From IMG/VR virus record IMGVR_UViG_3300032214_000715, positions 175,164-239,163 of that record: DNA of 64,000 nt, one strand, 5' to 3'. The notes below the pieces were generated by a model that saw nothing but the letters and a program-made list of their open reading frames with translations, did not search any database and had not been told where the DNA came from. The translations under genes and the position numbers were made by a program. This document shows, piece after piece, positions 44,252-52,383 of the stretch (the stretch's first letter is position 1; the number at the start of each line of letters is the position of its first letter).

Positions 44252-44902
44252 ATGTTATTTAGTAAAAATAAACGAGATATTTCATATATAAAAATTTGGG
44301 TTGAACATCATGGTCCAATTCCATTAGATAAAAATGGAAGAAGAATGGAAATTCATCACATAGACGGTGATAAAACCAACAATAACATAAACAATCTTCA
44401 ACTACTGACAATTGAAGAACATTTTGATATTCATTACAAACAACAGGACTATGGATCTTGCTATCTAATTGCTATTAGAATGAAAAAATCACCAGAAGAA
44501 ATTTCTGATCTTGCTCGTCAAGCACAATTAAAAAGAGTGACAGACGGAACTCATCATTTTTTAGGCCCTGCTATGAATGCTAAAAGAGTGACAGCCGGAA
44601 CTCATCACTGGCTTGATGGAACAAAGTCCAGAGAGACTCAAAACAATCTTGTGAAAAGCGGAGTACACAGATTTGTCAATTCTGATTGGCAGAAAAATAA
44701 TCAACTCAGTCTAGTTGAGTCAGGAAAGCATAACTTTCTCGGCGGACATTTACAAAAATCATTGGTAAAATCAGGAAAGCATCATTTCGTGACATCCAAT
44801 CCAGGAAAGATTCAGTGGGTGTGCGAGAAATGCGGGAAAGAGGGAAAGGGAAAAACCAATTACGCTCGTTGGCATGGAGAAAATTGCGTAGTAAAAAAAT
44901 AG
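44252..44902 (+). mobile_element. Free-standing HNH homing endonuclease
   Basis: HHGPIP..EIHHIDGDKTNNNINNLQLL..EEH..IH; five GxH(H/N/R)(F/W) repeats; C-terminal CEKC..H..NC; opposite strand to neighbours. Confidence 0.88.
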
Positions 44903-44920
44903 GGAGCAATTGCTCCCTAT
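44893..44920 (-). terminator. Terminator between the ATPase and HNH genes
   Basis: atagggagcaattgctccctat palindrome followed by a T-run on the minus strand. Confidence 0.8.
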
Positions 44921-44935
44921 AACGTGTGATGAATT

Positions 44936-45982
44936 TCAGTTCTTAACGCAGCATGTCTCCAGCGCAAGCATCTTCCAGTCAGTGGGATCAATTCTATACA
45001 GATCAGCAATCTTGAGAGCCATACGCAAACTCAACTCGCGAAGAATTTCTTTATTAGCCCACATGAACTCCAGAATTTCTTCGGATTGATTGTCCAGAAA
45101 TTCGTAATCAGCAAACAGACCGCCAACCACATCTTGACTGGCATCGGTGTGTACCTGACGAATTCTCAACATTTTGTCACGCGAGGTATTGATCGTGAGA
45201 TCCAGATAGTGACACCGAGATTGCAGAGCGGACAAGTGAGCAGCAATCTTCTTAGAGCGACGGTCGCTAAGATCCAGATTCGTCACAAAGATGCACGCCC
45301 CGTTGAACTCAAAATCGGTGGGAATGCCTTCCTTACGAAGAAAAGACGAATCACTATTCCACCAAATACGACGGCGCTTACCCGAATCAAGTGCGGCCTT
45401 CAGAATGTTCAGCGCATCTGGGTCATCAAAAACGTCTACGTCATCAAAGACCAAAACATTCTTACTGTCGCTATACTTGTACAGCAGTGCGTACAAACCG
45501 ATGGCAGTAATAGCGCCCTTGACAATCTCAAAGCGAACACGCTTGCCTGCCAGCTTGTCAAACAGACTTGCCTTTTCCAGTTGAGTCTCAATACCAAACG
45601 ACTTGCCAACGCCAGGAGGGCCAGTAACGATCATAGCACGACAGTCGCCGTTGATCGTAGCCTTGGTCATGGTGTCAAGAATACGAAACCGGCGACGGAT
45701 GCGATCCATGGCCTGCTCGTCAGTTTCATTGGATTCGGTCATAACTTCTGGCGAGAATGCTACAATTTGAGTGGGACGCGAGTTACCGTTGACGAATTCA
45801 ACATCAGCAGAATCGGTGATTTCAATATAAACCTGCTTGGAATCTCCAGGCAGTTGACCGTCATTCTTAACTTGAACACGACCAGGAGTAGAATCCAGAG
45901 GACGAGCCAGCGTGAACATCATGTTCTCAACAGCAAAGTTCATCTTGCGATACACGCCGCGCTTGACAAGAATTTGAGCCAT
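44936..45982 (-). CDS. AAA+/P-loop ATPase (early gene)
   Basis: IVTGPPGVGKS; VLVFDDVD; IFVTN; ALQSRC arginine finger. Confidence 0.85.
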   Translation of the reverse strand: MAQILVKRGVYRKMNFAVENMMFTLARPLDSTPGRVQVKNDGQLPGDSKQVYIEITDSADVEFVNGNSRPTQIVAFSPEVMTESNETDEQAMDRIRRRFRILDTMTKATINGDCRAMIVTGPPGVGKSFGIETQLEKASLFDKLAGKRVRFEIVKGAITAIGLYALLYKYSDSKNVLVFDDVDVFDDPDALNILKAALDSGKRRRIWWNSDSSFLRKEGIPTDFEFNGACIFVTNLDLSDRRSKKIAAHLSALQSRCHYLDLTINTSRDKMLRIRQVHTDASQDVVGGLFADYEFLDNQSEEILEFMWANKEILRELSLRMALKIADLYRIDPTDWKMLALETCCVKN

Positions 45983-46155
45983 TTCGTTGATTCCTTATCT
46001 AACTGTCTAGAGAATGATTATAGTTGATTTTTGATTTATTGTCAAAAAATTTCGGAAGAAATTTATTGAAAAAATCAGCGAGTCAGTGTTGTTCGGAACT
46101 GTCTCTATCAACTCAACAACAATAGTATATCACTGCGTTGATTTATTGTCAAATT

Positions 46156-46908
46156 TCAGACAAAAATCTTGACGCGGTTAAATTGAGTCTTACCGTCGGT
46201 ATGATGAGCCTTGACAGTACCCTGAGCGGCAATCTTGCTTCCAACTTCAGGGTTAGACTTGTTGGAGAAGAAAACAACCTGATCATTGTCAGTAATCATA
46301 GTGACGAAATAGCAAGCCCATTGCTGACTATACACTGTACGAACGACTTCGCCCTTGAACGAAACCTTATCACCAACTTGTCCGACATGTCCACCTCGGG
46401 CATCGGCAATACGATCCTCTACCGATTGGCGAACTGTAGCACGTTCGTAACCTTGGGGCAGATACGCAACCGTACCCAGATCACGTTCGCTCACAGTTTC
46501 ACTGTTGGCAAGAGCAAGAGCCTTGGCATCAAATTCATTCAACACCTTGCCACCAAGAATCTTGAACATCAGACCCTTGTAATGTGTGCGGATCTTCTCG
46601 CCCATTTCACGGTCAAAGTCCGTAAGGGTAGATTGATCGGCAAGCATACGAACCATCAGTTCACGATTACTTTGCTTGGGAACAGCAACGCCATCAGCAT
46701 CAAGAGTGTAGGCACCAGCCTTGATATACTCATTTCCGACCGCACGATAGGCAGCGTAAGCAGCAGCAAACACCGTGCTGGTATCGTACATCATGGGTTG
46801 AGAACGCACGTAACGTTGGCTGCGTGTCGGCTTATAGCCTTCATCTGCTTGACACAGGGCCTTGACTTGAGAATTGGTCATACCAGAAACATCAACAAAA
46901 CCAGCCAT
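46156..46908 (-). CDS. Early protein with C-terminal OB-fold-like domain
   Basis: HVGQVGDKV...GTVKAH...TQFNRVK. Confidence 0.65.
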   Translation of the reverse strand: MAGFVDVSGMTNSQVKALCQADEGYKPTRSQRYVRSQPMMYDTSTVFAAAYAAYRAVGNEYIKAGAYTLDADGVAVPKQSNRELMVRMLADQSTLTDFDREMGEKIRTHYKGLMFKILGGKVLNEFDAKALALANSETVSERDLGTVAYLPQGYERATVRQSVEDRIADARGGHVGQVGDKVSFKGEVVRTVYSQQWACYFVTMITDNDQVVFFSNKSNPEVGSKIAAQGTVKAHHTDGKTQFNRVKIFV

Positions 46909-46964
46909 TTCGTACTCCGTTGTCTAACTCAGTGAATACAGTATATCAAAATCCGTATTATTTG

Positions 46965-47246
46965 TCAAATATTGCCGCAGGCTACATCAACCCGCAGATC
47001 GTGAATGCTGCCAAAGTATTCATTGACCAGCGTCTTCTTGCTCTCAGTGACCTTGTAGCGACCATAACGGTTCTTCTTGGCATTGATCACTCGTCCCTTG
47101 AACAAGAGCGTAGTGCTGGCATCATTACGAACCATTTCGACTTGTCGCATCGTTTCCAACCGCAGAGCACCCTGCTCTGCTCGGGCTAGGGCAAGGTCCT
47201 TTTCCAAAGAATCAATACGCTGTTGGATCTGTTCGAACTTGCTCAT
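46965..47246 (-). CDS. Small early hypothetical protein
   Basis: 93 aa; own promoter and RBS. Confidence 0.7.
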   Translation of the reverse strand: MSKFEQIQQRIDSLEKDLALARAEQGALRLETMRQVEMVRNDASTTLLFKGRVINAKKNRYGRYKVTESKKTLVNEYFGSIHDLRVDVACGNI

Positions 47247-47304
47247 TTCGTTTACTCCGTTATCTAACTCAACAAATACAGTATATCACCAAACCGATTT
47301 ACTG

Positions 47305-47757
47305 TCAAATTTTGAAACAAAGCCTAGATTTGATTTCTATGAAAAACTGATGGTACTTTGCCATACGGGCAATGTCCTTTTCACTGACCCCCTTCAGTCG
47401 GCGAATGTCGGTGTTGTGTCGAAGGTCTGCCATCTTGACACGCATAGCATCCTCACTAGCAAAGACACCTTCCTTGTATTCTTCGTAGGTCTGACCAGGG
47501 ACTTTTGTCAGTGCGCGGATACCACTGATTACTCTCTCACTGATGCCCGCGTCACGAAGGTCCTTGTATGTGACACTAGTGTCCTCGATAACATCGTGAC
47601 CTAGTGCGATACACATCAGTTCCTCATCATCGGTCTTGAGATAATGCATGACCTTAAGAGGGTGAAGAATGTAGGGATTGCCACCTTTGTCAAATTGATC
47701 GGCATGAGCATTAGTCGCAATGACTAGCATCTTGCCTAACATTTCACCTTTTCTCAT
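47305..47757 (-). CDS. HD-domain small alarmone ((p)ppGpp) hydrolase, SpoT/Mesh1-like
   Basis: AHADQFDKGGNPYILHPLKV; ALGHDVIEDT; VKMADLRHN. Confidence 0.85.
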   Translation of the reverse strand: MRKGEMLGKMLVIATNAHADQFDKGGNPYILHPLKVMHYLKTDDEELMCIALGHDVIEDTSVTYKDLRDAGISERVISGIRALTKVPGQTYEEYKEGVFASEDAMRVKMADLRHNTDIRRLKGVSEKDIARMAKYHQFFIEIKSRLCFKI

Positions 47758-47811
47758 TTTTCGGTCCTTTCTTTTACTGTAGTTACAGTATACTACCGAA
47801 CCGATTATTTG

Positions 47812-48087
47812 TCAAGCAGTCTCTAGCATGTTGGCAGGAACACGCCAACGAGTCATTCCTGTATCAACAACTACATTCTTGGTCATGATCTTGGATACCT
47901 TACCAACTTCAGTCTGTCCCGTACGGCTATTGACGAACTTCACCATAGAACCAATCGTTACGGAACGACGAGTCTGCTTTGCCAAATTACCACGTGCGAA
48001 CTTCACCGCAGAAATAATAGAATTCAACTGTTCATTGGTCAAGGACCCGAACATGATGCTAGAATTGATTTCTTGAATAGTAGCCAT
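47812..48087 (-). CDS. Small early protein, SH3/KOW-like
   Basis: IGSMVKF...GKVSKI..KNVVV..WRVPANMLE. Confidence 0.7.
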   Translation of the reverse strand: MATIQEINSSIMFGSLTNEQLNSIISAVKFARGNLAKQTRRSVTIGSMVKFVNSRTGQTEVGKVSKIMTKNVVVDTGMTRWRVPANMLETA

Positions 48088-48146
48088 TTCGTTTACTCCT
48101 GTTTTCTAACTCAGTGAATACAGTATATCAAAAATCGGATTTATTG

Positions 48147-48500
48147 TCAAACCCCGAGAACTTCGCGTTCCTCTTCGGACAACTTATTCAGTGCTGCCCT
48201 GCGAAGCATAGCCCTACGCTCGGCTTCGGCAGCCTGTGCTTCCTCACGGTCCAGAACGAATTCCAGATCGTAGAGTACTTCATCGGTTACTCCGTCGTAT
48301 TCCAACGCAAGGATGAAACCCTCATTATTCAGAGTTGCATCGAACATTCCGCGTCGAACGAAAACATCACCGCCCAACTTGTTCAAGCGTTCCAGAGCAG
48401 CCATCAATCGTGCAGGGTACGTCGCCCGGGCTTCTGCGATCTGCGCGTTCCGCAGTGCGTCACGTTCTGCCATCAGTTCTGCTTTAGTCTTACGTGCCAT
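48147..48500 (-). CDS. Small early hypothetical protein
   Basis: Start ATG at 48500 after GGAG (MARKTKAEL); ends ALNKLSEEEREVLGV. Confidence 0.75.
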   Translation of the reverse strand: MARKTKAELMAERDALRNAQIAEARATYPARLMAALERLNKLGGDVFVRRGMFDATLNNEGFILALEYDGVTDEVLYDLEFVLDREEAQAAEAERRAMLRRAALNKLSEEEREVLGV

Positions 48501-48559
48501 TTTGTGCTCCTGTTTTCTAACTTGAATACAGTATATCAAAAAACGGATTTATTGTCAAA

Positions 48560-48730
48560 TTACTGAGACTCAACGCTACATTCGCATTCATAATCAGTCG
48601 ACTTACGATTAGGATTTTTCTCCCACTCGGCCCAGGCAGCTTCCTCAATTTCATCTTCGCTTGCTTCATTCAAAACATCAAAGACAACACGATAGGTTAC
48701 AGTCTCGGTAAAAATAGCAACGCGGCGCAT
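48560..48730 (-). CDS. Small acidic early protein (56 aa)
   Basis: AAGGA RBS; MRRVAIFTETVTYRVVFDV...SVESQ*. Confidence 0.65.
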   Translation of the reverse strand: MRRVAIFTETVTYRVVFDVLNEASEDEIEEAAWAEWEKNPNRKSTDYECECSVESQ

Positions 48731-48741
48731 TTGTTTGTCCT

Positions 48742-49002
48742 TTACAGAGTATTCAGTGTCGCTTGTAGTTCAGTAAAAGTCTTATAGACTTGAGAGCCAT
48801 CACGACTAGTACGCAAGATCATAAAGTTACGATTGTAGATTTCTACAGTGGCATCTAATGTGCGAGCGCGACCAAAAGTGATGGCAAGATACTTGCGTCC
48901 ATTCTTACTGGTCTGCTCACTGGTAAGAATGCCGTATGGCGCATTGAAATTTCTAGACTTGACAAACGTTTCAATCGCCGAAAGTATTGCTTGACTGTTC
49001 AT
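48742..49002 (-). CDS. Small early hypothetical protein
   Basis: 86 aa; ITFGRARTLDATVEIY. Confidence 0.65.
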   Translation of the reverse strand: MNSQAILSAIETFVKSRNFNAPYGILTSEQTSKNGRKYLAITFGRARTLDATVEIYNRNFMILRTSRDGSQVYKTFTELQATLNTL

Positions 49003-49005
49003 TCT

Positions 49006-49119
49006 TCAACCAAATTCATTGTAAATTTGAATATCTTGCTCGTATTGTTCAACAAAAGCGAGAAAAGCAGCATCTTCATCGTGCTGTTGATCCGTCAACT
49101 CTGGCTGTGTAGTGTTCAT
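49006..49119 (-). CDS. Very small acidic early peptide (37 aa)
   Basis: GGAG RBS; MNTTQPELTDQQHDEDAAFLAFVEQYEQDIQIYNEFG*; first ORF after the promoter at 49148-49176. Confidence 0.55.
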   Translation of the reverse strand: MNTTQPELTDQQHDEDAAFLAFVEQYEQDIQIYNEFG

Positions 49120-49237
49120 CAACATCTCCAACTGATTCAATACTGGTAGTATAGCAGGACCATGATTTATTGTCAAATTGTGAAACTAAAAGTAAATCAT
49201 CTCCAGGAAACAATTATGTTCGAGGAAGACTTTCGCG

Positions 49238-49693
49238 TCACAACTCATAGCCATCAAGGCCAGCTGCCTTCAACTTGATCAAGTGGCCAAGCATGAAGTT
49301 CTTAGACTCTAACGCTTTGAGAACTCCCAAGTAGCGATTTCTAATGAGTGCCACCTCATTTATTAGTATCTCAAAATCAATCACTTCATTTTCACCGTCC
49401 ACGTATTTCTCAGCATCTCGACTTGTCAACGCACGATTGTACCCTTCTAAGTACTTCTGAAAGTACTTGCGTCGGAGAGCCCGCAACTTGATGTTGAGAT
49501 AGTTTAGTACTGCCTCAATATCCTGTAGACTGGCAAAATAGGACTCTGTTAGTCCTGGCATCATAAAGACATTCTTCTCTACTCTGCCAGAAATCTTGAC
49601 ATCCTGTTTTGCCGTCTCCAACTGTTGCTCATAATAAGCAACAAAGTCAGGCAGAACACCTAGGTCAGCAGTAATTCTACTGTACCAATTCAT
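49238..49693 (-). CDS. uvsY: UvsY-like recombination mediator
   Basis: YLEGYNRALTSRDAEKYVDGE...RNRYLGVLKALESK; near recA. Confidence 0.7.
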   Translation of the reverse strand: MNWYSRITADLGVLPDFVAYYEQQLETAKQDVKISGRVEKNVFMMPGLTESYFASLQDIEAVLNYLNIKLRALRRKYFQKYLEGYNRALTSRDAEKYVDGENEVIDFEILINEVALIRNRYLGVLKALESKNFMLGHLIKLKAAGLDGYEL

Positions 49694-49697
49694 TTAA

Positions 49698-49973
49698 TTA
49701 CTCATCGTAATCTTCTTCGTCACCAAAGCCTAATTCTTCATAGTTATCATCGTAGTCATCCAAATTTTCCGACGTATCTTCGCTATAGAACTTTACAGCG
49801 TCAAGTACGTCCCGATCACCGTCAAATTCATGACGAATGTCCTCTAAATCAAAATCATACTCCATAAGTAGCGTCACCATACTATCTGCTAGTTGCGTCT
49901 TATCATCTGGTGTTACATACTCGCTCATCATATTCCAAATATCAGCAATTGCGGCTAGGGCTGATTTACTCAT
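49698..49973 (-). CDS. Small acidic hypothetical protein
   Basis: 91 aa, Asp/Glu-rich tail. Confidence 0.6.
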   Translation of the reverse strand: MSKSALAAIADIWNMMSEYVTPDDKTQLADSMVTLLMEYDFDLEDIRHEFDGDRDVLDAVKFYSEDTSENLDDYDDNYEELGFGDEEDYDE

Positions 49974-51030
49974 CTTCTACTTCCTCCGTTACTTGAATGT
50001 TGATTTCTTGATCGCGTAAAGAAAATTCTTTCATTACTAGATCCATGATTCCATTTTCATTTTTATTCCACTCTTTGCGAAAGTATTTATGTACTTCTCC
50101 ATTCAAATCTGTATATGAATAACGATTTCCCTCTTTCTTAATAAGTTGTCGCTTTTCAATCAAATCAAAAAATCCACTGTAAGGATTCATACCCGTGCTA
50201 TATGGAATTTGAATTTGAATGTCTTCAAATGGCTTAGCGTATCGGGTCTTCATAATTTTACAACCAGCACGAATTCCAAGTACATCGCTTACTTTGTTGC
50301 CATCCTCGTCTTCTTTTAGTTTCAACTTCTTCATTGCTACCAGAATAGAACTGGCATACACGAATCCCTGACCACCGCTAACTACTGGGTCTGGATTATA
50401 TGGGTCCTGACTAGCATAGCTATGATTGGTAGCTACTAATCCAACATTATGATTACCAAACATATTTACGCAATTGGTAACTAATGCCTTAAGAGCCTTT
50501 GCTTTTCGCCCCATATCTCCCTTCATGTCACCCGCTTCAAACTGATTGAGTTCAGTAGGCGACATCAGCATTCCAAGGCTATCAATTACAAATAAAACTT
50601 TGAGACGAGCTTCTGCTGGCATTTCCTTGTAGTCGCTCATGAACTTTGAAATTGTCTTAGCAACATCGTCAATCATTGCCATAGATAACTTGAGTAATTT
50701 TTCTTCGCTAGTATCAACGCCCAATGCTTTTAGCCAACTTTCGTCAAGAGCATTTTCGGTATCAATTAATACTACAAAAATGCCCTGTTCTTGAGCATGT
50801 CGCACTAGATTGCCACTACAAATGTAGCTTTTTCCGCTACCGCTTTCTCCAGCAAATACAGTTACTTTTCCTAGAGGAACGCCCTTGTTAAAGTCCCCGC
50901 TAATCAGATAATTCAGTGCGTAATTGCCTGTGTTGACCCAATCAGTGGGATCATTAAATCCGATACTAAGACCATCAATACTCTTGGTCAGTTCTCGTCT
51001 AAATTTTGAAATGTCGAACGGTTTTGTCAT
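49966..51030 (-). CDS. uvsX: RecA/UvsX recombinase
   Basis: TGNYALN..ISG..GVPLGKVTVFAGESGSGKS; IDTENALD; VIDSLG; ATNH; KTR. Confidence 0.93.
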   Translation of the reverse strand: MTKPFDISKFRRELTKSIDGLSIGFNDPTDWVNTGNYALNYLISGDFNKGVPLGKVTVFAGESGSGKSYICSGNLVRHAQEQGIFVVLIDTENALDESWLKALGVDTSEEKLLKLSMAMIDDVAKTISKFMSDYKEMPAEARLKVLFVIDSLGMLMSPTELNQFEAGDMKGDMGRKAKALKALVTNCVNMFGNHNVGLVATNHSYASQDPYNPDPVVSGGQGFVYASSILVAMKKLKLKEDEDGNKVSDVLGIRAGCKIMKTRYAKPFEDIQIQIPYSTGMNPYSGFFDLIEKRQLIKKEGNRYSYTDLNGEVHKYFRKEWNKNENGIMDLVMKEFSLRDQEINIQVTEEVEDE

Positions 51031-51336: not shown

Positions 51337-52383
51337 TTAAGCTACTTTGTTTTGCCTTGAGCGAATCATCGCCAAAATGTCTTGAGTTTTTTCGCTAGTT
51401 TGCTTCGGTGGAACCTTTACCTCAACTGCTGGCGCTGGTTCTTCCCAAGGAGCTGATTCCTCAACTGTCGCCTTTACTGCTGGCTTAGAAACAAAAGTAG
51501 CGGTACGCGTTGACTTGCTTGATTCGTCAAATTCGGGAACATCAGCATCTTCAGATGAAGATCCAGAGGTCTGAAGGCCCCAAGGCTTGTAGTAAGACGC
51601 CCACTTATCCGGATCGTACATACGTCCATCAACGCTAGCCTCAAACATATCCTTGATGATGCGAACTTCACTTTCGCTGGGCTTCTTAGGCAAGAATTCC
51701 TTTAGATTGTACAACCCATAAGCATCAATCGCCGCACGTTCTGCTTCAGTAAGAGCGGTAGGACCCTTCATAAATGACCAGTCGCTAGTACTCCAGTCCG
51801 CGTATCCACCTGGATTCTTGGAGCGAATAACCTTGAAGTCTAGACCTTGATTGAAGTCGCTAGGCATAACATCAAACTCTGGATCAAGCAAACTCTTCTT
51901 AATGTTCTTAAAGATTTGAGGGGTAATGATAAAGCGACGAATCGGATTCTCTGGTTGTTCATCGTCTGGTAAGCCATTTGTACGAACAAAGCCCTGTAGT
52001 AAATAACTACGCTTCTTCCAGTACTTGTTGGCGGTTTCCTTTAGACTTTCATCCTTGTACCAAGTGCGAACTTCTGCCAGAACTGGGCACTTTTCGCTTT
52101 CGCCGTACATTTCAATACACGGCACTTGAACCACGACTTCCTTGTTTTCATTTTGACCCTTAATGCCAGCAAATGGCAGTTTGATCATTTGACGCTCAAT
52201 CCAAAAATATACGTTATCGGTATCGCCGTCCGGTAGAAAACGAAGCGAAGAGCTTGCTCCTTCAGGCAAATTCCAGTGAGCGTAGATGGACTTATCTCCA
52301 CCGATCTTCTGTGATTGTTGTTGATTTTGTTGTGAACGATTTTCTTGTGCCTGTAGTTTGGCACGCAATGCTGCTAGTGACAT
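51337..52383 (-). CDS. Single-stranded DNA-binding protein (T4 gp32-like)
   Basis: LRFLPD; C..MY...CPV; YWKKRSY; DFKVI...YADWSTS; acidic/low-complexity tail. Confidence 0.88.
   Translation of the reverse strand: MSLAALRAKLQAQENRSQQNQQQSQKIGGDKSIYAHWNLPEGASSSLRFLPDGDTDNVYFWIERQMIKLPFAGIKGQNENKEVVVQVPCIEMYGESEKCPVLAEVRTWYKDESLKETANKYWKKRSYLLQGFVRTNGLPDDEQPENPIRRFIITPQIFKNIKKSLLDPEFDVMPSDFNQGLDFKVIRSKNPGGYADWSTSDWSFMKGPTALTEAERAAIDAYGLYNLKEFLPKKPSESEVRIIKDMFEASVDGRMYDPDKWASYYKPWGLQTSGSSSEDADVPEFDESSKSTRTATFVSKPAVKATVEESAPWEEPAPAVEVKVPPKQTSEKTQDILAMIRSRQNKVA

What the first reader, a model, noticed from the sequence alone, without database searches (positions are those of the whole stretch)
45983..49176. 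Promoter-cassette array: early genes each bracketed by a conserved stop/-35...RBS/ATG repeat
Seen: eight near-consensus promoters, all TTGACA-exactly 17 nt-TATA(C/A)T, in 3.2 kb. Most have A(T/A)(A/T)AAT after the -35 box and TGATATACTGTATT at the -10 box. Five share an AGTTAGA..GGA..AAATG leader. The intergenic DNA is essentially only this ~60-bp unit, giving a structure of [repeat-ORF]n. The island looks GC-richer than its flanks. Established: T4-type phages have repeated early-promoter elements (PeSLs) that shuffle small genes by recombination. Inference: an integrase-free gene-cassette system, in which recombination between repeats adds, drops or reorders host-takeover or anti-defence genes, each arriving with its own expression signals.
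Basis: partly seen in the sequence, partly recalled or inferred. Interest (0 to 1): 0.8.

Follow-up and report, generated by a model that had tools for sequence, protein, structure and literature searches.

The report
Early-promoter gene cassettes in T4-like phage
A 3-kb stretch of an uncultivated freshwater T4-like phage has eight copies of a ~60-bp strong-promoter-plus-ribosome-site unit, one before almost every small gene, and related phages show genes lost, gained and reordered at these units; it is a terminator-less version of the 'PeSL' shuffling cassettes already known in T4-type phages.

Summary
Eight exact TTGACA-N17-TATA(C/A)T sites lie on the minus strand between 46017 and 49176 (0.08 expected), and there are none elsewhere in the 64 kb. 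Each is the core of a ~60-bp unit: -35, ATAAAT, extended -10, a conserved leader, GGAG and ATG. This unit is essentially the whole intergenic DNA. In four units the upstream gene's TGA stop lies inside the -35 box.

The window is the end of a 239-kb IMG/VR contig of a divergent T4-type phage. The array fills a variable region between SSB-UvsX-UvsY genes and an NrdC.10-like ATPase gene. Relatives keep these flanks, but cassette content and order differ in every lineage.

Junctions with a unit almost never keep the same neighbour (10/134 against 168/359 comparisons). Ends of nucleotide homology fall in units (21/26 against 5.5% expected). Elsewhere in the same genome, one 290-bp cassette is missing exactly between two units of a relative, leaving a chimeric unit.

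This is the known PeSL modular-shuffling idea (Arbiol 2010; Comeau 2014). The difference is that the stem-loop/terminator is absent here. Promoter activity, early timing and the recombination itself are inferred, not observed. Only one cassette has a recognisable function, a small alarmone hydrolase-like HD protein.

The parts
49117..49176 (-). Unit P8: -35 TTGACA (49176-49171), -10 TATACT, leader, GGAG, ATG of a 37-39 aa ORF. First unit of the array, 62 nt after the uvsY-like stop.
   Evidence: PWM score 33
48498..48558 (-). Unit P7, through the ATG of the 117-aa ORF. Type I leader (GTATTCAAGTTAGAAAACAGGAGC).
   Evidence: (PWM 55)
48085..48150 (-). Unit P6, through the ATG of the 91-aa ORF. 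The TGA stop of the 117-aa ORF lies inside the -35 box.
   Evidence: PWM 53
47755..47815 (-). Unit P5, through the ATG of the HD gene. Its leader is HD-specific and carries the inverted repeat TACTGTA-N2-TACAGTA. The stop of the 91-aa ORF lies inside the -35.
47244..47308 (-). Unit P4, through the ATG of the 93-aa ORF. The stop of the HD gene lies inside the -35.
46906..46968 (-). Unit P3, through the ATG of the 250-aa ORF. The stop of the 93-aa ORF lies inside the -35.
46046..46152 (-). Orphan unit P2 (-35 at 46152, -10 ending at 46124) plus a 78-nt spacer. It has no credible ORF, forms a tandem promoter with P1, and may be an emptied cassette site.
   Evidence: the spacer has no homologue in any fetched locus and no significant fold
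45980..46045 (-). Unit P1 (perfect TTGACA-N17-TATAAT, type III leader), through the ATG of the NrdC.10-like gene.
49006..49119 (-). Cassette 1, gene 1: 37-aa ORF (39 aa if started at 49125). Function unknown.
   Evidence: JGI gene call; homologue in relative C
48742..49002 (-). Cassette 1, gene 2: 86-aa ORF. Function unknown. 71% identical in relative C.
48560..48730 (-). Cassette 1, gene 3: 56-aa ORF with no unit in front. Found only in this phage among the loci fetched.
48147..48500 (-). Cassette 2: 117-aa ORF. Function unknown. The family recurs in other contexts (L078, L092).
47812..48087 (-). Cassette 3: 91-aa ORF from a widespread phage-only family. Its neighbours differ between relatives.
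47305..47757 (-). Cassette 4: 150-aa HD-domain protein, small alarmone hydrolase-like. Best solved relative is a (p)ppApp hydrolase.
   Evidence: 7smg, E 7e-24; phrog_990; HD_4, below cut-off
46965..47246 (-). Cassette 5: 93-aa ORF. Function unknown. Absent from relatives; L051 has HD-unit-OB250 directly.
46156..46908 (-). Cassette 6: 250-aa protein with a weak C-terminal OB-fold signal, from a phage-only family.
44936..45982 (-). Conserved downstream flank: NrdC.10-like AAA ATPase (348 aa), transcribed from P1 plus read-through.
   Evidence: phrog_1250; 37% identity to Acj9 nrdC.10
44899..44920 (-). The only strong intrinsic terminator in the region (9-bp stem, T-run). It probably ends all array transcripts.
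   Evidence: weak Rfam look-alike
49238..49693 (-). Conserved upstream flank: UvsY-like recombination mediator. It is preceded by a UvsX-like recombinase (49966-51030) and a gp32-like SSB (51337-52383).

Best explanation
The eight repeats are copies of a ~60-bp expression unit. Each unit has a near-consensus sigma-70 promoter (TTGACA, 17 nt, TATACT, mostly with an extended -10 TG) fused to a conserved 5' leader with a GGAG Shine-Dalgarno and the ATG.

One unit sits in front of each small-gene cassette in a hyperplastic region. This region lies between the SSB-UvsX-UvsY genes and an NrdC.10-like gene of an uncultivated freshwater T4-type phage.

Inferred function 1: host RNA polymerase starts at every unit immediately after infection. 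There are no terminators between cassettes, so transcripts read through to the terminator at 44920-44899.

Inferred function 2: the units are the only sequence shared between otherwise unrelated cassettes, so they act as portable patches of homology. Crossovers inside them occur within one genome or between co-infecting relatives, most simply through the phage's own UvsX/UvsY-type recombination. These crossovers delete, insert, duplicate or reorder whole cassettes, and each cassette keeps a complete promoter and ribosome site.

This is how PeSL elements of T4-type phages are proposed to work. Here the unit has no stem-loop, and the -35 box often contains the stop codon of the preceding gene.

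Shown: the repeat family, its placement, the variable content and order in relatives, homology ends in units, and one chimeric unit at an exact cassette deletion. Inferred: promoter activity, early timing, and the recombination pathway.
For: The repeat family is real and confined to this array within the window.

The unit family is widespread in the clade. 114 non-identical units were found in 26 viral loci. The PWM gives 183 sense hits against 1 antisense hit, and the unit's -35 start lies 57-62 nt from the ATG in most cases.

The phage is T4-type and the array lies between conserved genes.

Relatives keep the flanks but shuffle the content:
- A: uvsY|37 86 56|117|91|HD|93|OB250||nrdC.10
- B: uvsY|106|106' OB250|HD|79|nrdC.10
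- C: uvsY|37 86|84|HD|91 54|68|four genes|OB250|nrdC.10
- Four more arrangements occur in L004, L020, L065 and L083.

Adjacency across unit-bearing junctions is conserved in 10/134 pairwise comparisons, against 168/359 for unit-less junctions (p=3e-18). For genes of 200 aa or less the figures are 0/93 against 57/185.

Homology switches inside the unit. Pairs with the same upstream gene lose identity after the -10. Pairs with the same downstream gene gain it from the -10/leader onward.

Of the ends of inter-genome homology blocks, 21 of 26 lie in units against 5.5% expected. Left ends fall at the -35 and right ends at the next ATG.

The HD cassette is 75-100% identical in 78 loci, yet it has about 40 different upstream and about 36 different downstream neighbour families.

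Exact event: genome A (L006, the same arrangement as L010 from a second sample) lacks a 290-bp cassette that L005 has, between flanks that are 97-100% identical. A's unit carries the spacer of L005 unit 1 and the SD region of L005 unit 2. The crossover therefore lies within their shared 30 nt, from the -10 to the SD. The same cassette (95% identical) sits elsewhere in A between other neighbours, with homology bounded by units.

Arrangements recur in independent samples.
Against: - The shared exact stretches are short, 13-36 nt.
- Units within a genome are only slightly more alike than units between genomes (0.512 against 0.481), so homogenisation by frequent exchange is weak.
- The intergenic DNA consists of the unit alone. 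'Breakpoint in a unit' therefore largely equals 'breakpoint between genes', which selection alone would favour.
- Unit-less junctions between small genes are also often broken (128/185). Part of this is noise from crude ORF calling.
- Some differences lie at junctions with no unit in the window phage, for example 86|56.
- A scan for indels between near-identical loci found 25 events. None had all four boundaries in recognised units. Most were in clades whose promoters the PWM does not recognise. One 749-bp indel carries a late-promoter cassette.
- No read-level evidence for circles or deletions could be obtained. All runs were Logan contigs that break at the repeats.
- No relative close enough to show an event inside the focal array at nucleotide resolution was found.
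Confidence: 0.7

Rival explanations
1. The units are only expression signals, kept alike by selection for host polymerase and ribosome recognition. Gene turnover happens by illegitimate or other recombination anywhere, and only products with junctions between genes survive. The association with units would then be a by-product of the units being the whole intergenic space.
For: - Promoter and SD positions carry most of the conservation, and the spacer is variable.
- Within-genome homogenisation is weak.
- Many unit-less junctions are also broken.
- Unit-independent intergenic indels exist in related clades.
- At larger distances, HD homology ends simply at the coding sequence plus the promoter hexamers.
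Against: - Illegitimate joins within a 60-nt window should often damage or duplicate promoter parts. Yet nearly all junctions hold exactly one intact unit with exact 17-nt spacing.
- The chimeric unit at an exact 290-bp cassette difference is the signature of a crossover within shared sequence.
- The leader is conserved far beyond a minimal SD, and is identical across different genes and phages.
Confidence: 0.2
2. A dedicated site-specific system moves the cassettes. A phage-encoded recombinase or nuclease would recognise part of the unit, for example the ATAC-T-GTAT palindrome at the -10/+1. This would work like an integron, but with the promoter as the attachment site.
For: The unit is conserved well beyond promoter needs and contains a short palindrome. 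Arbiol et al. raised the possibility of a helper protein for PeSLs.
Against: - No integrase or recombinase family was found in the ten genes of the array and its immediate flanks.
- The nearby HNH gene is an insertion absent from relative C.
- Inferred crossover positions differ between events: in the -35/spacer for A against B and C, and between the -10 and SD.
- No attC-like inverted repeats were found.
Confidence: 0.04
3. The apparent shuffling is an assembly artefact. Short-read metagenome assemblers would mis-join related phage strains at the repeated units.
For: Logan k=31 contigs do break exactly at the units, and depth rises 3-5 fold there. All relatives are metagenomic contigs.
Against: - The same arrangements were assembled independently from different samples: A in 3300032214 and 3300034198, B in 3300009152 and 3300009160, and several others.
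- Identical stretches between units are at most about 36 nt, far below read length.
- Cassette proteins have diverged together with their flanks (55-90% identity), which chimeras of co-occurring strains would not produce.
Confidence: 0.03
4. Homing-endonuclease activity drives the local mosaicism. The HNH gene next to nrdC.10 would cause double-strand-break repair and co-conversion of flanking DNA.
For: An HNH endonuclease gene (44252-44902, + strand) lies immediately after the array's last gene. It is an insertion relative to C. Comeau et al. list homing endonucleases as a second source of plasticity.
Against: It explains neither the genome-wide and clade-wide link between units and breakpoints, nor the exact event in another region, nor the shuffling in relatives that lack this HNH gene.
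Confidence: 0.03

Closest known systems
PeSL (promoter-early stem-loop) cassettes of coliphages RB49 and phi1 (Arbiol, Comeau, Kutateladze, Adamia, Krisch 2010, PMC2839356)
   Same: - Near-perfect sigma-70 promoters (TTGACA-N17-TATAAT) repeated in hyperplastic regions of T4-type genomes.
- The unit ends with an SD and the ATG of a small ORFan.
- Insertions, deletions and replacements between relatives lie at the elements.
- Crossovers mapped between the -10 and the SD/ATG, as in the event.
- No dedicated recombinase is known.
   Different: - PeSLs have a stem-loop (GGGG..CCCC) just upstream of the promoter that works as a terminator and insulates each cassette. Here there is none. The upstream gene's stop lies at most 15 nt before the -35, or inside the unit, in 86 of 99 units.
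- The leader is much more conserved here.
- Mini-circles were shown for RB49/phi1 and could not be tested here.
- The phages are only distantly related (NrdC.10 at most 38% identical to cultured T4-type phages).
PeSL/PmSL elements of T4/PST and KVP40/nt-1 (Comeau, Arbiol, Krisch 2014, PMC4122927)
   Same: - Uninterrupted series of small ORFs with an element in every intergenic space (six in nt-1 at 51-56 kb) and many rearrangements there.
- Clade-specific versions of the element.
- Degraded or half elements and tandem remnants occur, comparable to the orphan P2.
   Different: - Those promoters deviate from the consensus (TTTACW.., TTGYVH..) and keep a stem-loop.
- The present units are closer to the consensus, lack the stem-loop, and overlap the preceding stop codon.
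- More distant relatives of the present phage do have GGGGC-T-run terminators directly before the -35. The terminator-less form is therefore a local variant.
Morons of lambdoid and other phages (Hendrix and colleagues; cited from my own knowledge, not checked here)
   Same: Small accessory genes that bring their own promoter and sit between conserved genes. They are gained and lost as units.
   Different: Morons are typically promoter-gene-terminator units, often expressed from the prophage. They do not share a common repeated flank that could serve as a recombination site. Here there are no terminators, the phage is lytic T4-type, and all cassettes share one unit.
Integron gene cassettes
   Same: An array of single promoter-proximal small genes whose content and order vary between relatives. 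Each cassette is bounded by a repeated element.
   Different: Integrons need an IntI tyrosine recombinase, attI/attC sites with imperfect inverted repeats, and one common promoter Pc, with promoter-less cassettes. Here no integrase was found near the array, there are no inverted repeats, and every cassette has its own promoter.
Host-takeover module of Bacillus phage SPO1, and early regions of T5 and T4, with many strong early promoters before small genes (from my own knowledge, not checked here)
   Same: Dense clusters of very strong host-type promoters and strong ribosome sites before small early genes of mostly unknown function.
   Different: For those clusters, the emphasis is on expression. 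Shuffling at the promoters between relatives has not, to my knowledge, been the defining feature.

Membership tests
PeSL (promoter-early stem-loop) elements of T4-type phages | Sigma-70-type early promoter with -35 and -10 boxes 17 nt apart | tested here: met
   There are 8 of 8 exact TTGACA-N17-TATA(C/A)T sites, and 6 of 8 have an extended -10 TG. Activity itself was not tested.
PeSL (promoter-early stem-loop) elements of T4-type phages | Stem-loop (terminator) immediately upstream of the promoter | tested here: not met
   No terminator-like site lies between cassettes. The 60 nt upstream of each -35 fold no better than shuffles (z from -0.08 to -1.37). In the clade, 86 of 99 units have the upstream stop codon at most 15 nt before the -35 or inside the unit. 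More distant relatives do have GGGGC-T-run hairpins there.
PeSL (promoter-early stem-loop) elements of T4-type phages | [quoted passage not shown] | tested here: inconclusive
   Only a weak AAAT preference is seen in the 4 nt before the -35 (0.1-0.4 bits). Further upstream is coding sequence of the preceding gene.
PeSL (promoter-early stem-loop) elements of T4-type phages | Shine-Dalgarno and start codon of the downstream ORF at the 3' end of the element | tested here: met
   GGAG or GGA lies 6-10 nt before the ATG in 7 of 8 units. The orphan P2 lacks an ORF.
PeSL (promoter-early stem-loop) elements of T4-type phages | Located preferentially in hyperplastic regions between conserved core genes | tested here: met
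   The array lies between SSB-UvsX-UvsY and NrdC.10/helicase genes. No unit occurs in the other 60 kb of the window, which holds structural and replication genes.
PeSL (promoter-early stem-loop) elements of T4-type phages | Insertions, deletions and replacements between related phages lie at the elements | tested here: met
   Not every difference lies at a unit.
PeSL (promoter-early stem-loop) elements of T4-type phages | Crossover inside the element (between the -10 and SD/ATG in the published circles) | tested here: met
   One exact case is in another variable region of the same genome: a chimeric unit with the crossover in the 30 nt from the -10 to the SD. In the focal array only coarse placement inside units is possible.
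PeSL (promoter-early stem-loop) elements of T4-type phages | Formation of mini-circles by recombination between neighbouring elements | not testable with these tools
   Only assembled Logan contigs were available. They break at the repeats and drop rare variants.
Integron | IntI-type integrase next to the array, and attC sites (imperfect inverted repeats) bounding promoter-less cassettes | tested here: not met
   The ten genes of the array and its immediate flanks have no integrase or recombinase domain. No inverted repeats of 30 nt or more were found. Every cassette has its own promoter.
Moron | Autonomous promoter-gene-terminator unit | tested here: not met
   The promoter is present. There is no terminator after any cassette, and the only one is at 44920-44899 after the last gene.

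The most novel reading that the evidence does not exclude
The unit is more than a passive patch of homology. Its strongly conserved leader and the short palindrome at the -10/+1 would be recognised by a phage or host factor that makes it a preferred breakage and rejoining site. A whole community of freshwater T4-like phages would then share one adaptor and a common pool of ready-to-express cassettes, in effect an integron-like exchange system without an integrase. The alarmone-hydrolase cassette, seen in about 40 contexts, would be its most successful passenger.
Probability: 0.08. Interest if true: 0.8.

Novelty: new variant of a known kind. Interest (0 to 1): 0.45.

Why it matters
PeSL-mediated shuffling rests on a handful of cultured phage pairs and has had little follow-up. 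Here the same logic appears in an uncultivated freshwater clade of large T4-like phages, with over a hundred units and many natural rearrangements to compare.

The terminator half of the element seems dispensable. Cassettes are exchanged even though they are not transcriptionally insulated, and even though the promoter overlaps the preceding stop codon.

The clade offers a natural data set for measuring how short regulatory repeats shape phage accessory-gene turnover. The ~60-bp unit could also be tested as a compact expression and recombination adaptor. It does not establish a new principle.

Tried and rejected
- Megablast of the array, and blastn of one unit, against 50,697 GenBank phage records gave no match. 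No cultured close relative exists. The best cultured hits for the HD protein are at most 61% identical.
- Reads: 4 runs were laid on 44500-50400. All are Logan contigs. They end at the units (46922-46942, 48531), and depth rises to 120-200 against 39 there. The listed 'joints' are short-sided cross-matches between repeat copies. This gives no usable evidence for or against circles or deletions.
- Exact-protein look-ups for the 93-aa and 91-aa cassette proteins returned only the source arrangement.
- Rfam found nothing meaningful.
- A terminator scan and folding of the 60 nt upstream of each promoter found no stem-loops. Filing the units as true PeSLs was therefore rejected.
- The P2-P1 spacer was tested as the scar of a known cassette. 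It has no homologue in any locus.
- A scan for indels between near-identical loci found 25 events, mostly in clades whose promoters my PWM does not recognise. None had all four ends in recognised units. It is kept as evidence against, not for.
- The family-level 'clean indel' list is noisy because of small repeated ORF families. Only individual cases were used, such as HD|93|OB250 against HD|OB250 in L051. That junction is too diverged for nucleotide-level inference.
- Concerted evolution of units within a genome was tested. The effect is real but small.
- The T4 late-promoter motif is not enriched overall.
- The adjacency statistics use crude ATG-only ORF calls, single-linkage families and merged genome labels. 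They should be read as rough.

Full report
**Observation**

The pattern TTGACA-N17-TATAMT occurs exactly eight times in the 64-kb window. All eight are on the minus strand, with -35 starts at 49176, 48558, 48150, 47815, 47308, 46968, 46152 and 46045. Dinucleotide-preserving shuffles give 0.08. Allowing one mismatch adds a single unrelated site. A weight matrix (PWM) built later from 97 related units finds only these eight in the whole window.

Read on the minus strand, each site is the core of a unit of about 60 nt:
- TTGACA
- ATAAAT or AATAAT (7 of 8)
- a variable spacer
- TG-n-TATACT (extended -10 in 6 of 8)
- GTATTCA..GAGTTAGA.AAC.GGAG
- 6-10 nt, then ATG

The unit is the entire intergenic DNA. 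For P6, P5, P4 and P3 the TGA stop of the preceding gene lies inside the -35 hexamer. The repeat finder recovers the family independently. GC is 0.45-0.47 in the island against 0.39-0.40 beside it.

**Genes and genome**

All genes here are on the minus strand, and JGI's own gene calls agree. In the order of transcription they are:
- gp32-like SSB, a 79-aa ORF, UvsX-like recombinase, a 91-aa ORF, UvsY-like mediator
- P8 | 37, 86, 56 aa
- P7 | 117 aa
- P6 | 91 aa
- P5 | 150-aa HD protein
- P4 | 93 aa
- P3 | 250 aa with a weak OB-fold signal
- P2 (no ORF) and P1 | NrdC.10-like AAA ATPase of 348 aa
- the only strong terminator of the region, at 44920-44899

The HD protein is closest to a solved (p)ppApp hydrolase and to the hydrolase domains of RelA/SpoT enzymes. 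The other cassette proteins belong to phage-only families of unknown function.

The window is the last 64 kb of the 239,163-bp contig IMGVR_UViG_3300032214_000715. It comes from an aquatic or freshwater setting. It has no near relative among GenBank phages. Its NrdC.10, UvsX, UvsY, gp41-like helicase, primase and large terminase place it among divergent T4-type phages.

**The unit family**

An exact search for the unit's core in IMG/VR found 26 loci from about 17 related contigs. These hold 114 non-identical units. All point the same way as the genes, and a few leader subtypes recur across different genes and phages. The matrix gives 183 sense hits and 1 antisense hit. At least 26 distinct units lie in the available pieces of this genome.

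In 99 units with a nearby upstream ORF:
- 40 have that gene's TGA inside the -35.
- 47 have the stop somewhere inside the unit.
- 39 have it within 15 nt before the unit.

The ATG lies mostly 57-62 nt after the -35 start.

There is thus no room for the stem-loop of a PeSL. No terminator-like site lies between cassettes, and the 60 nt before each promoter fold no better than shuffles.

**Comparison of the same region in relatives**

The NrdC.10-like protein retrieved the region from relatives. Flanks are conserved and collinear, and the interior is not:
- Phage B (L029 and L037, two samples): uvsY | 106 | 106' OB250 | HD | 79 | nrdC.10
- Phage C (L030): uvsY | 37 86 | 84 | HD | 91 54 | 68 | four genes | OB250 | nrdC.10
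- L004, L020, L065/L067 and L083 have further arrangements.

HD and OB250 are in opposite order in A and B. The 91-aa gene and HD are in opposite order in A and C. L051 has HD | OB250 directly, where the window has the 93-aa cassette between two units.

Nucleotide homology between A and B begins exactly at the -35 of P5 and ends at the ATG after P4. The OB250 block ends in the -35 region of the following unit. Inspection of the junction units places each switch between the -35 and the -10/leader.

**Statistics over the clade**

These used crude ORF calls and family clustering over 31 loci and 12 genome labels.
- A junction that carries a unit keeps the same downstream neighbour in 10 of 134 pairwise comparisons. 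Unit-less junctions keep it in 168 of 359 (p=3e-18).
- Restricted to genes of at most 200 aa, the figures are 0 of 93 against 57 of 185.
- Identity profiles show that sequence before the -35 travels with the upstream gene. Sequence from the -10/leader onward travels with the downstream gene.
- Of 26 internal ends of inter-genome homology blocks (at least 120 nt and 85% identity), 21 lie in unit windows that make up 5.5% of the DNA.
- The HD cassette was found in 141 viral contigs at 75-100% protein identity. In 78 loci it has about 40 different upstream and about 36 different downstream neighbour families, and a unit stands directly upstream in 50.
- In more distant members, a GGGGC-T-run terminator directly precedes the -35. 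These are true PeSLs.

**An exact event**

In another variable region of the same genome (L006 and L010, two samples), a conserved gene X is followed by one unit and then a gene starting MTAEF. In contig 3300042914_002420 (L005), the same X (97% identical) is followed by a unit, a 76-aa gene (MKVGD...), a second unit, and the same MTAEF gene (70 of 70 nt identical).

The single unit in A has the spacer of L005's first unit and the SD region of its second. The crossover therefore lies in the 30 nt that the two units share, from the -10 to the SD, and the difference is exactly 290 bp. The MKVGD cassette (95% identical) is present in A elsewhere, between other neighbours, and its homology is bounded by the flanking units.

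This is the pattern expected from recombination between two units, and it matches the crossover positions published for PeSL mini-circles.

**What is known**

Arbiol et al. 2010 and Comeau et al. 2014 define PeSLs as follows: an AT-rich stretch, a sigma-70-like early promoter, an SD and ATG, plus a stem-loop terminator just upstream. PeSLs are concentrated in hyperplastic regions, associated with indels and replacements, and able to form mini-circles.

The present units meet the promoter, SD/ATG, location and rearrangement criteria, and show the crossover position in one case. They fail the stem-loop criterion. Circles could not be tested. I therefore describe them as working like PeSLs and as a terminator-less variant, not as PeSLs in the strict sense. 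They are neither integron cassettes nor morons (membership table).

**Limits**

- Promoter activity and early timing are inferred from the consensus only.
- The intergenic DNA is the unit itself. Selection for intact genes would place surviving breakpoints there whatever the mechanism.
- The exact shared stretches are short. Within-genome similarity of units is only slightly raised.
- Unit-independent differences exist.
- Read data were uninformative.
- Assembly artefacts are unlikely, because arrangements recur in independent samples and cassette proteins have diverged along with their flanks.

**Verdict**

The element is a new, terminator-less variant of a known kind of phage regulatory cassette, found in an uncultivated clade. 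It is of moderate interest.

Noticed in passing
window 44252-44902 (+ strand): An HNH homing-type endonuclease gene (216 aa; phrog_12324, PF13392) lies on the opposite strand, directly after the terminator of the NrdC.10-like gene. Relative C (L030) lacks it, so it is an insertion between nrdC.10 and the conserved 72-aa ORF.
   Followed up: partly
window 46046-46152 (- strand): Unit P2 has an intact promoter but no ORF. Only a 78-nt spacer separates it from P1. The start of its leader resembles other leaders, and the spacer matches nothing else fetched. Tandem 'empty' units also occur in L055 (19 | | 17). These may be emptied cassette sites or drive a small RNA.
   Followed up: partly
window 47815, 47308, 46968, 48150 and clade-wide (L001-L030): The TGA stop codon of the preceding gene lies inside the -35 hexamer TTGACA in 40 of 99 units. 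TGACAATAA gives two in-frame stops. One hexamer thus serves as both a stop codon and a promoter box.
   Followed up: yes
window 47305-47757 (-); L045-L124: The HD protein resembles small alarmone hydrolases ((p)ppApp hydrolase 7smg, E 7e-24). It is unusually conserved (75-100%) across 141 viral contigs of up to 364 kb, while its neighbours differ almost everywhere. Cultured phage homologues are at most 61% identical (Ralstonia RSP15, Pectobacterium POP15).
   Followed up: partly
window 47775-47795 (-); upstream of HD in L045-L124: A 6-7 bp inverted repeat, (T)ACTGTA-N2-TACAGT(A), overlaps the -10 and the start site of the HD promoter. It occurs in 14 of 63 non-identical HD upstream regions, at a fixed distance (31-34 nt before the ATG), and accounts for most of its 24 occurrences in 1.06 Mb. 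It may be an operator for a regulator.
   Followed up: partly
window units P7, P6, P4, P3 (e.g. 48536-48522): The common unit contains the short palindrome ATAC-T-GTAT, which spans the end of the -10 hexamer and the first transcribed bases. Its significance is unknown.
   Followed up: no
L047, L064, L089, L090, L094 and others, just upstream of the HD promoter: More distant relatives have GGGGC(T)n hairpin terminators directly before the -35. These are canonical PeSL architecture, and L043/L044 have GGGGG-TTGACA..CCCC. The terminator-less form is specific to the window's clade.
   Followed up: partly
L040 903-1653 versus L039 8833-8853: In marine relatives, a 749-bp indel carries a gene preceded by a T4 late-promoter motif (TATAAATA) and abuts an early promoter. 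In the window, TATAAATA lies just upstream of minus-strand genes at 2703, 7409, 44150 and 62470, although the motif is not enriched overall.
   Followed up: partly
run X1, loose end at window 48561: A contig from the source sample continues from a unit into sequence that looks like the end of a tRNA gene (..GGTTCGAATCC.. on the other strand). Units may also flank tRNA genes elsewhere in this genome.
   Followed up: no
L020 (IMGVR_UViG_3300008448_000233), array between uvsY and nrdC.10: The same small-gene family occurs twice in one array, each copy behind its own unit (| 61 167 | 33 | 61 84 |). Unequal crossing-over between units would produce this.
   Followed up: no
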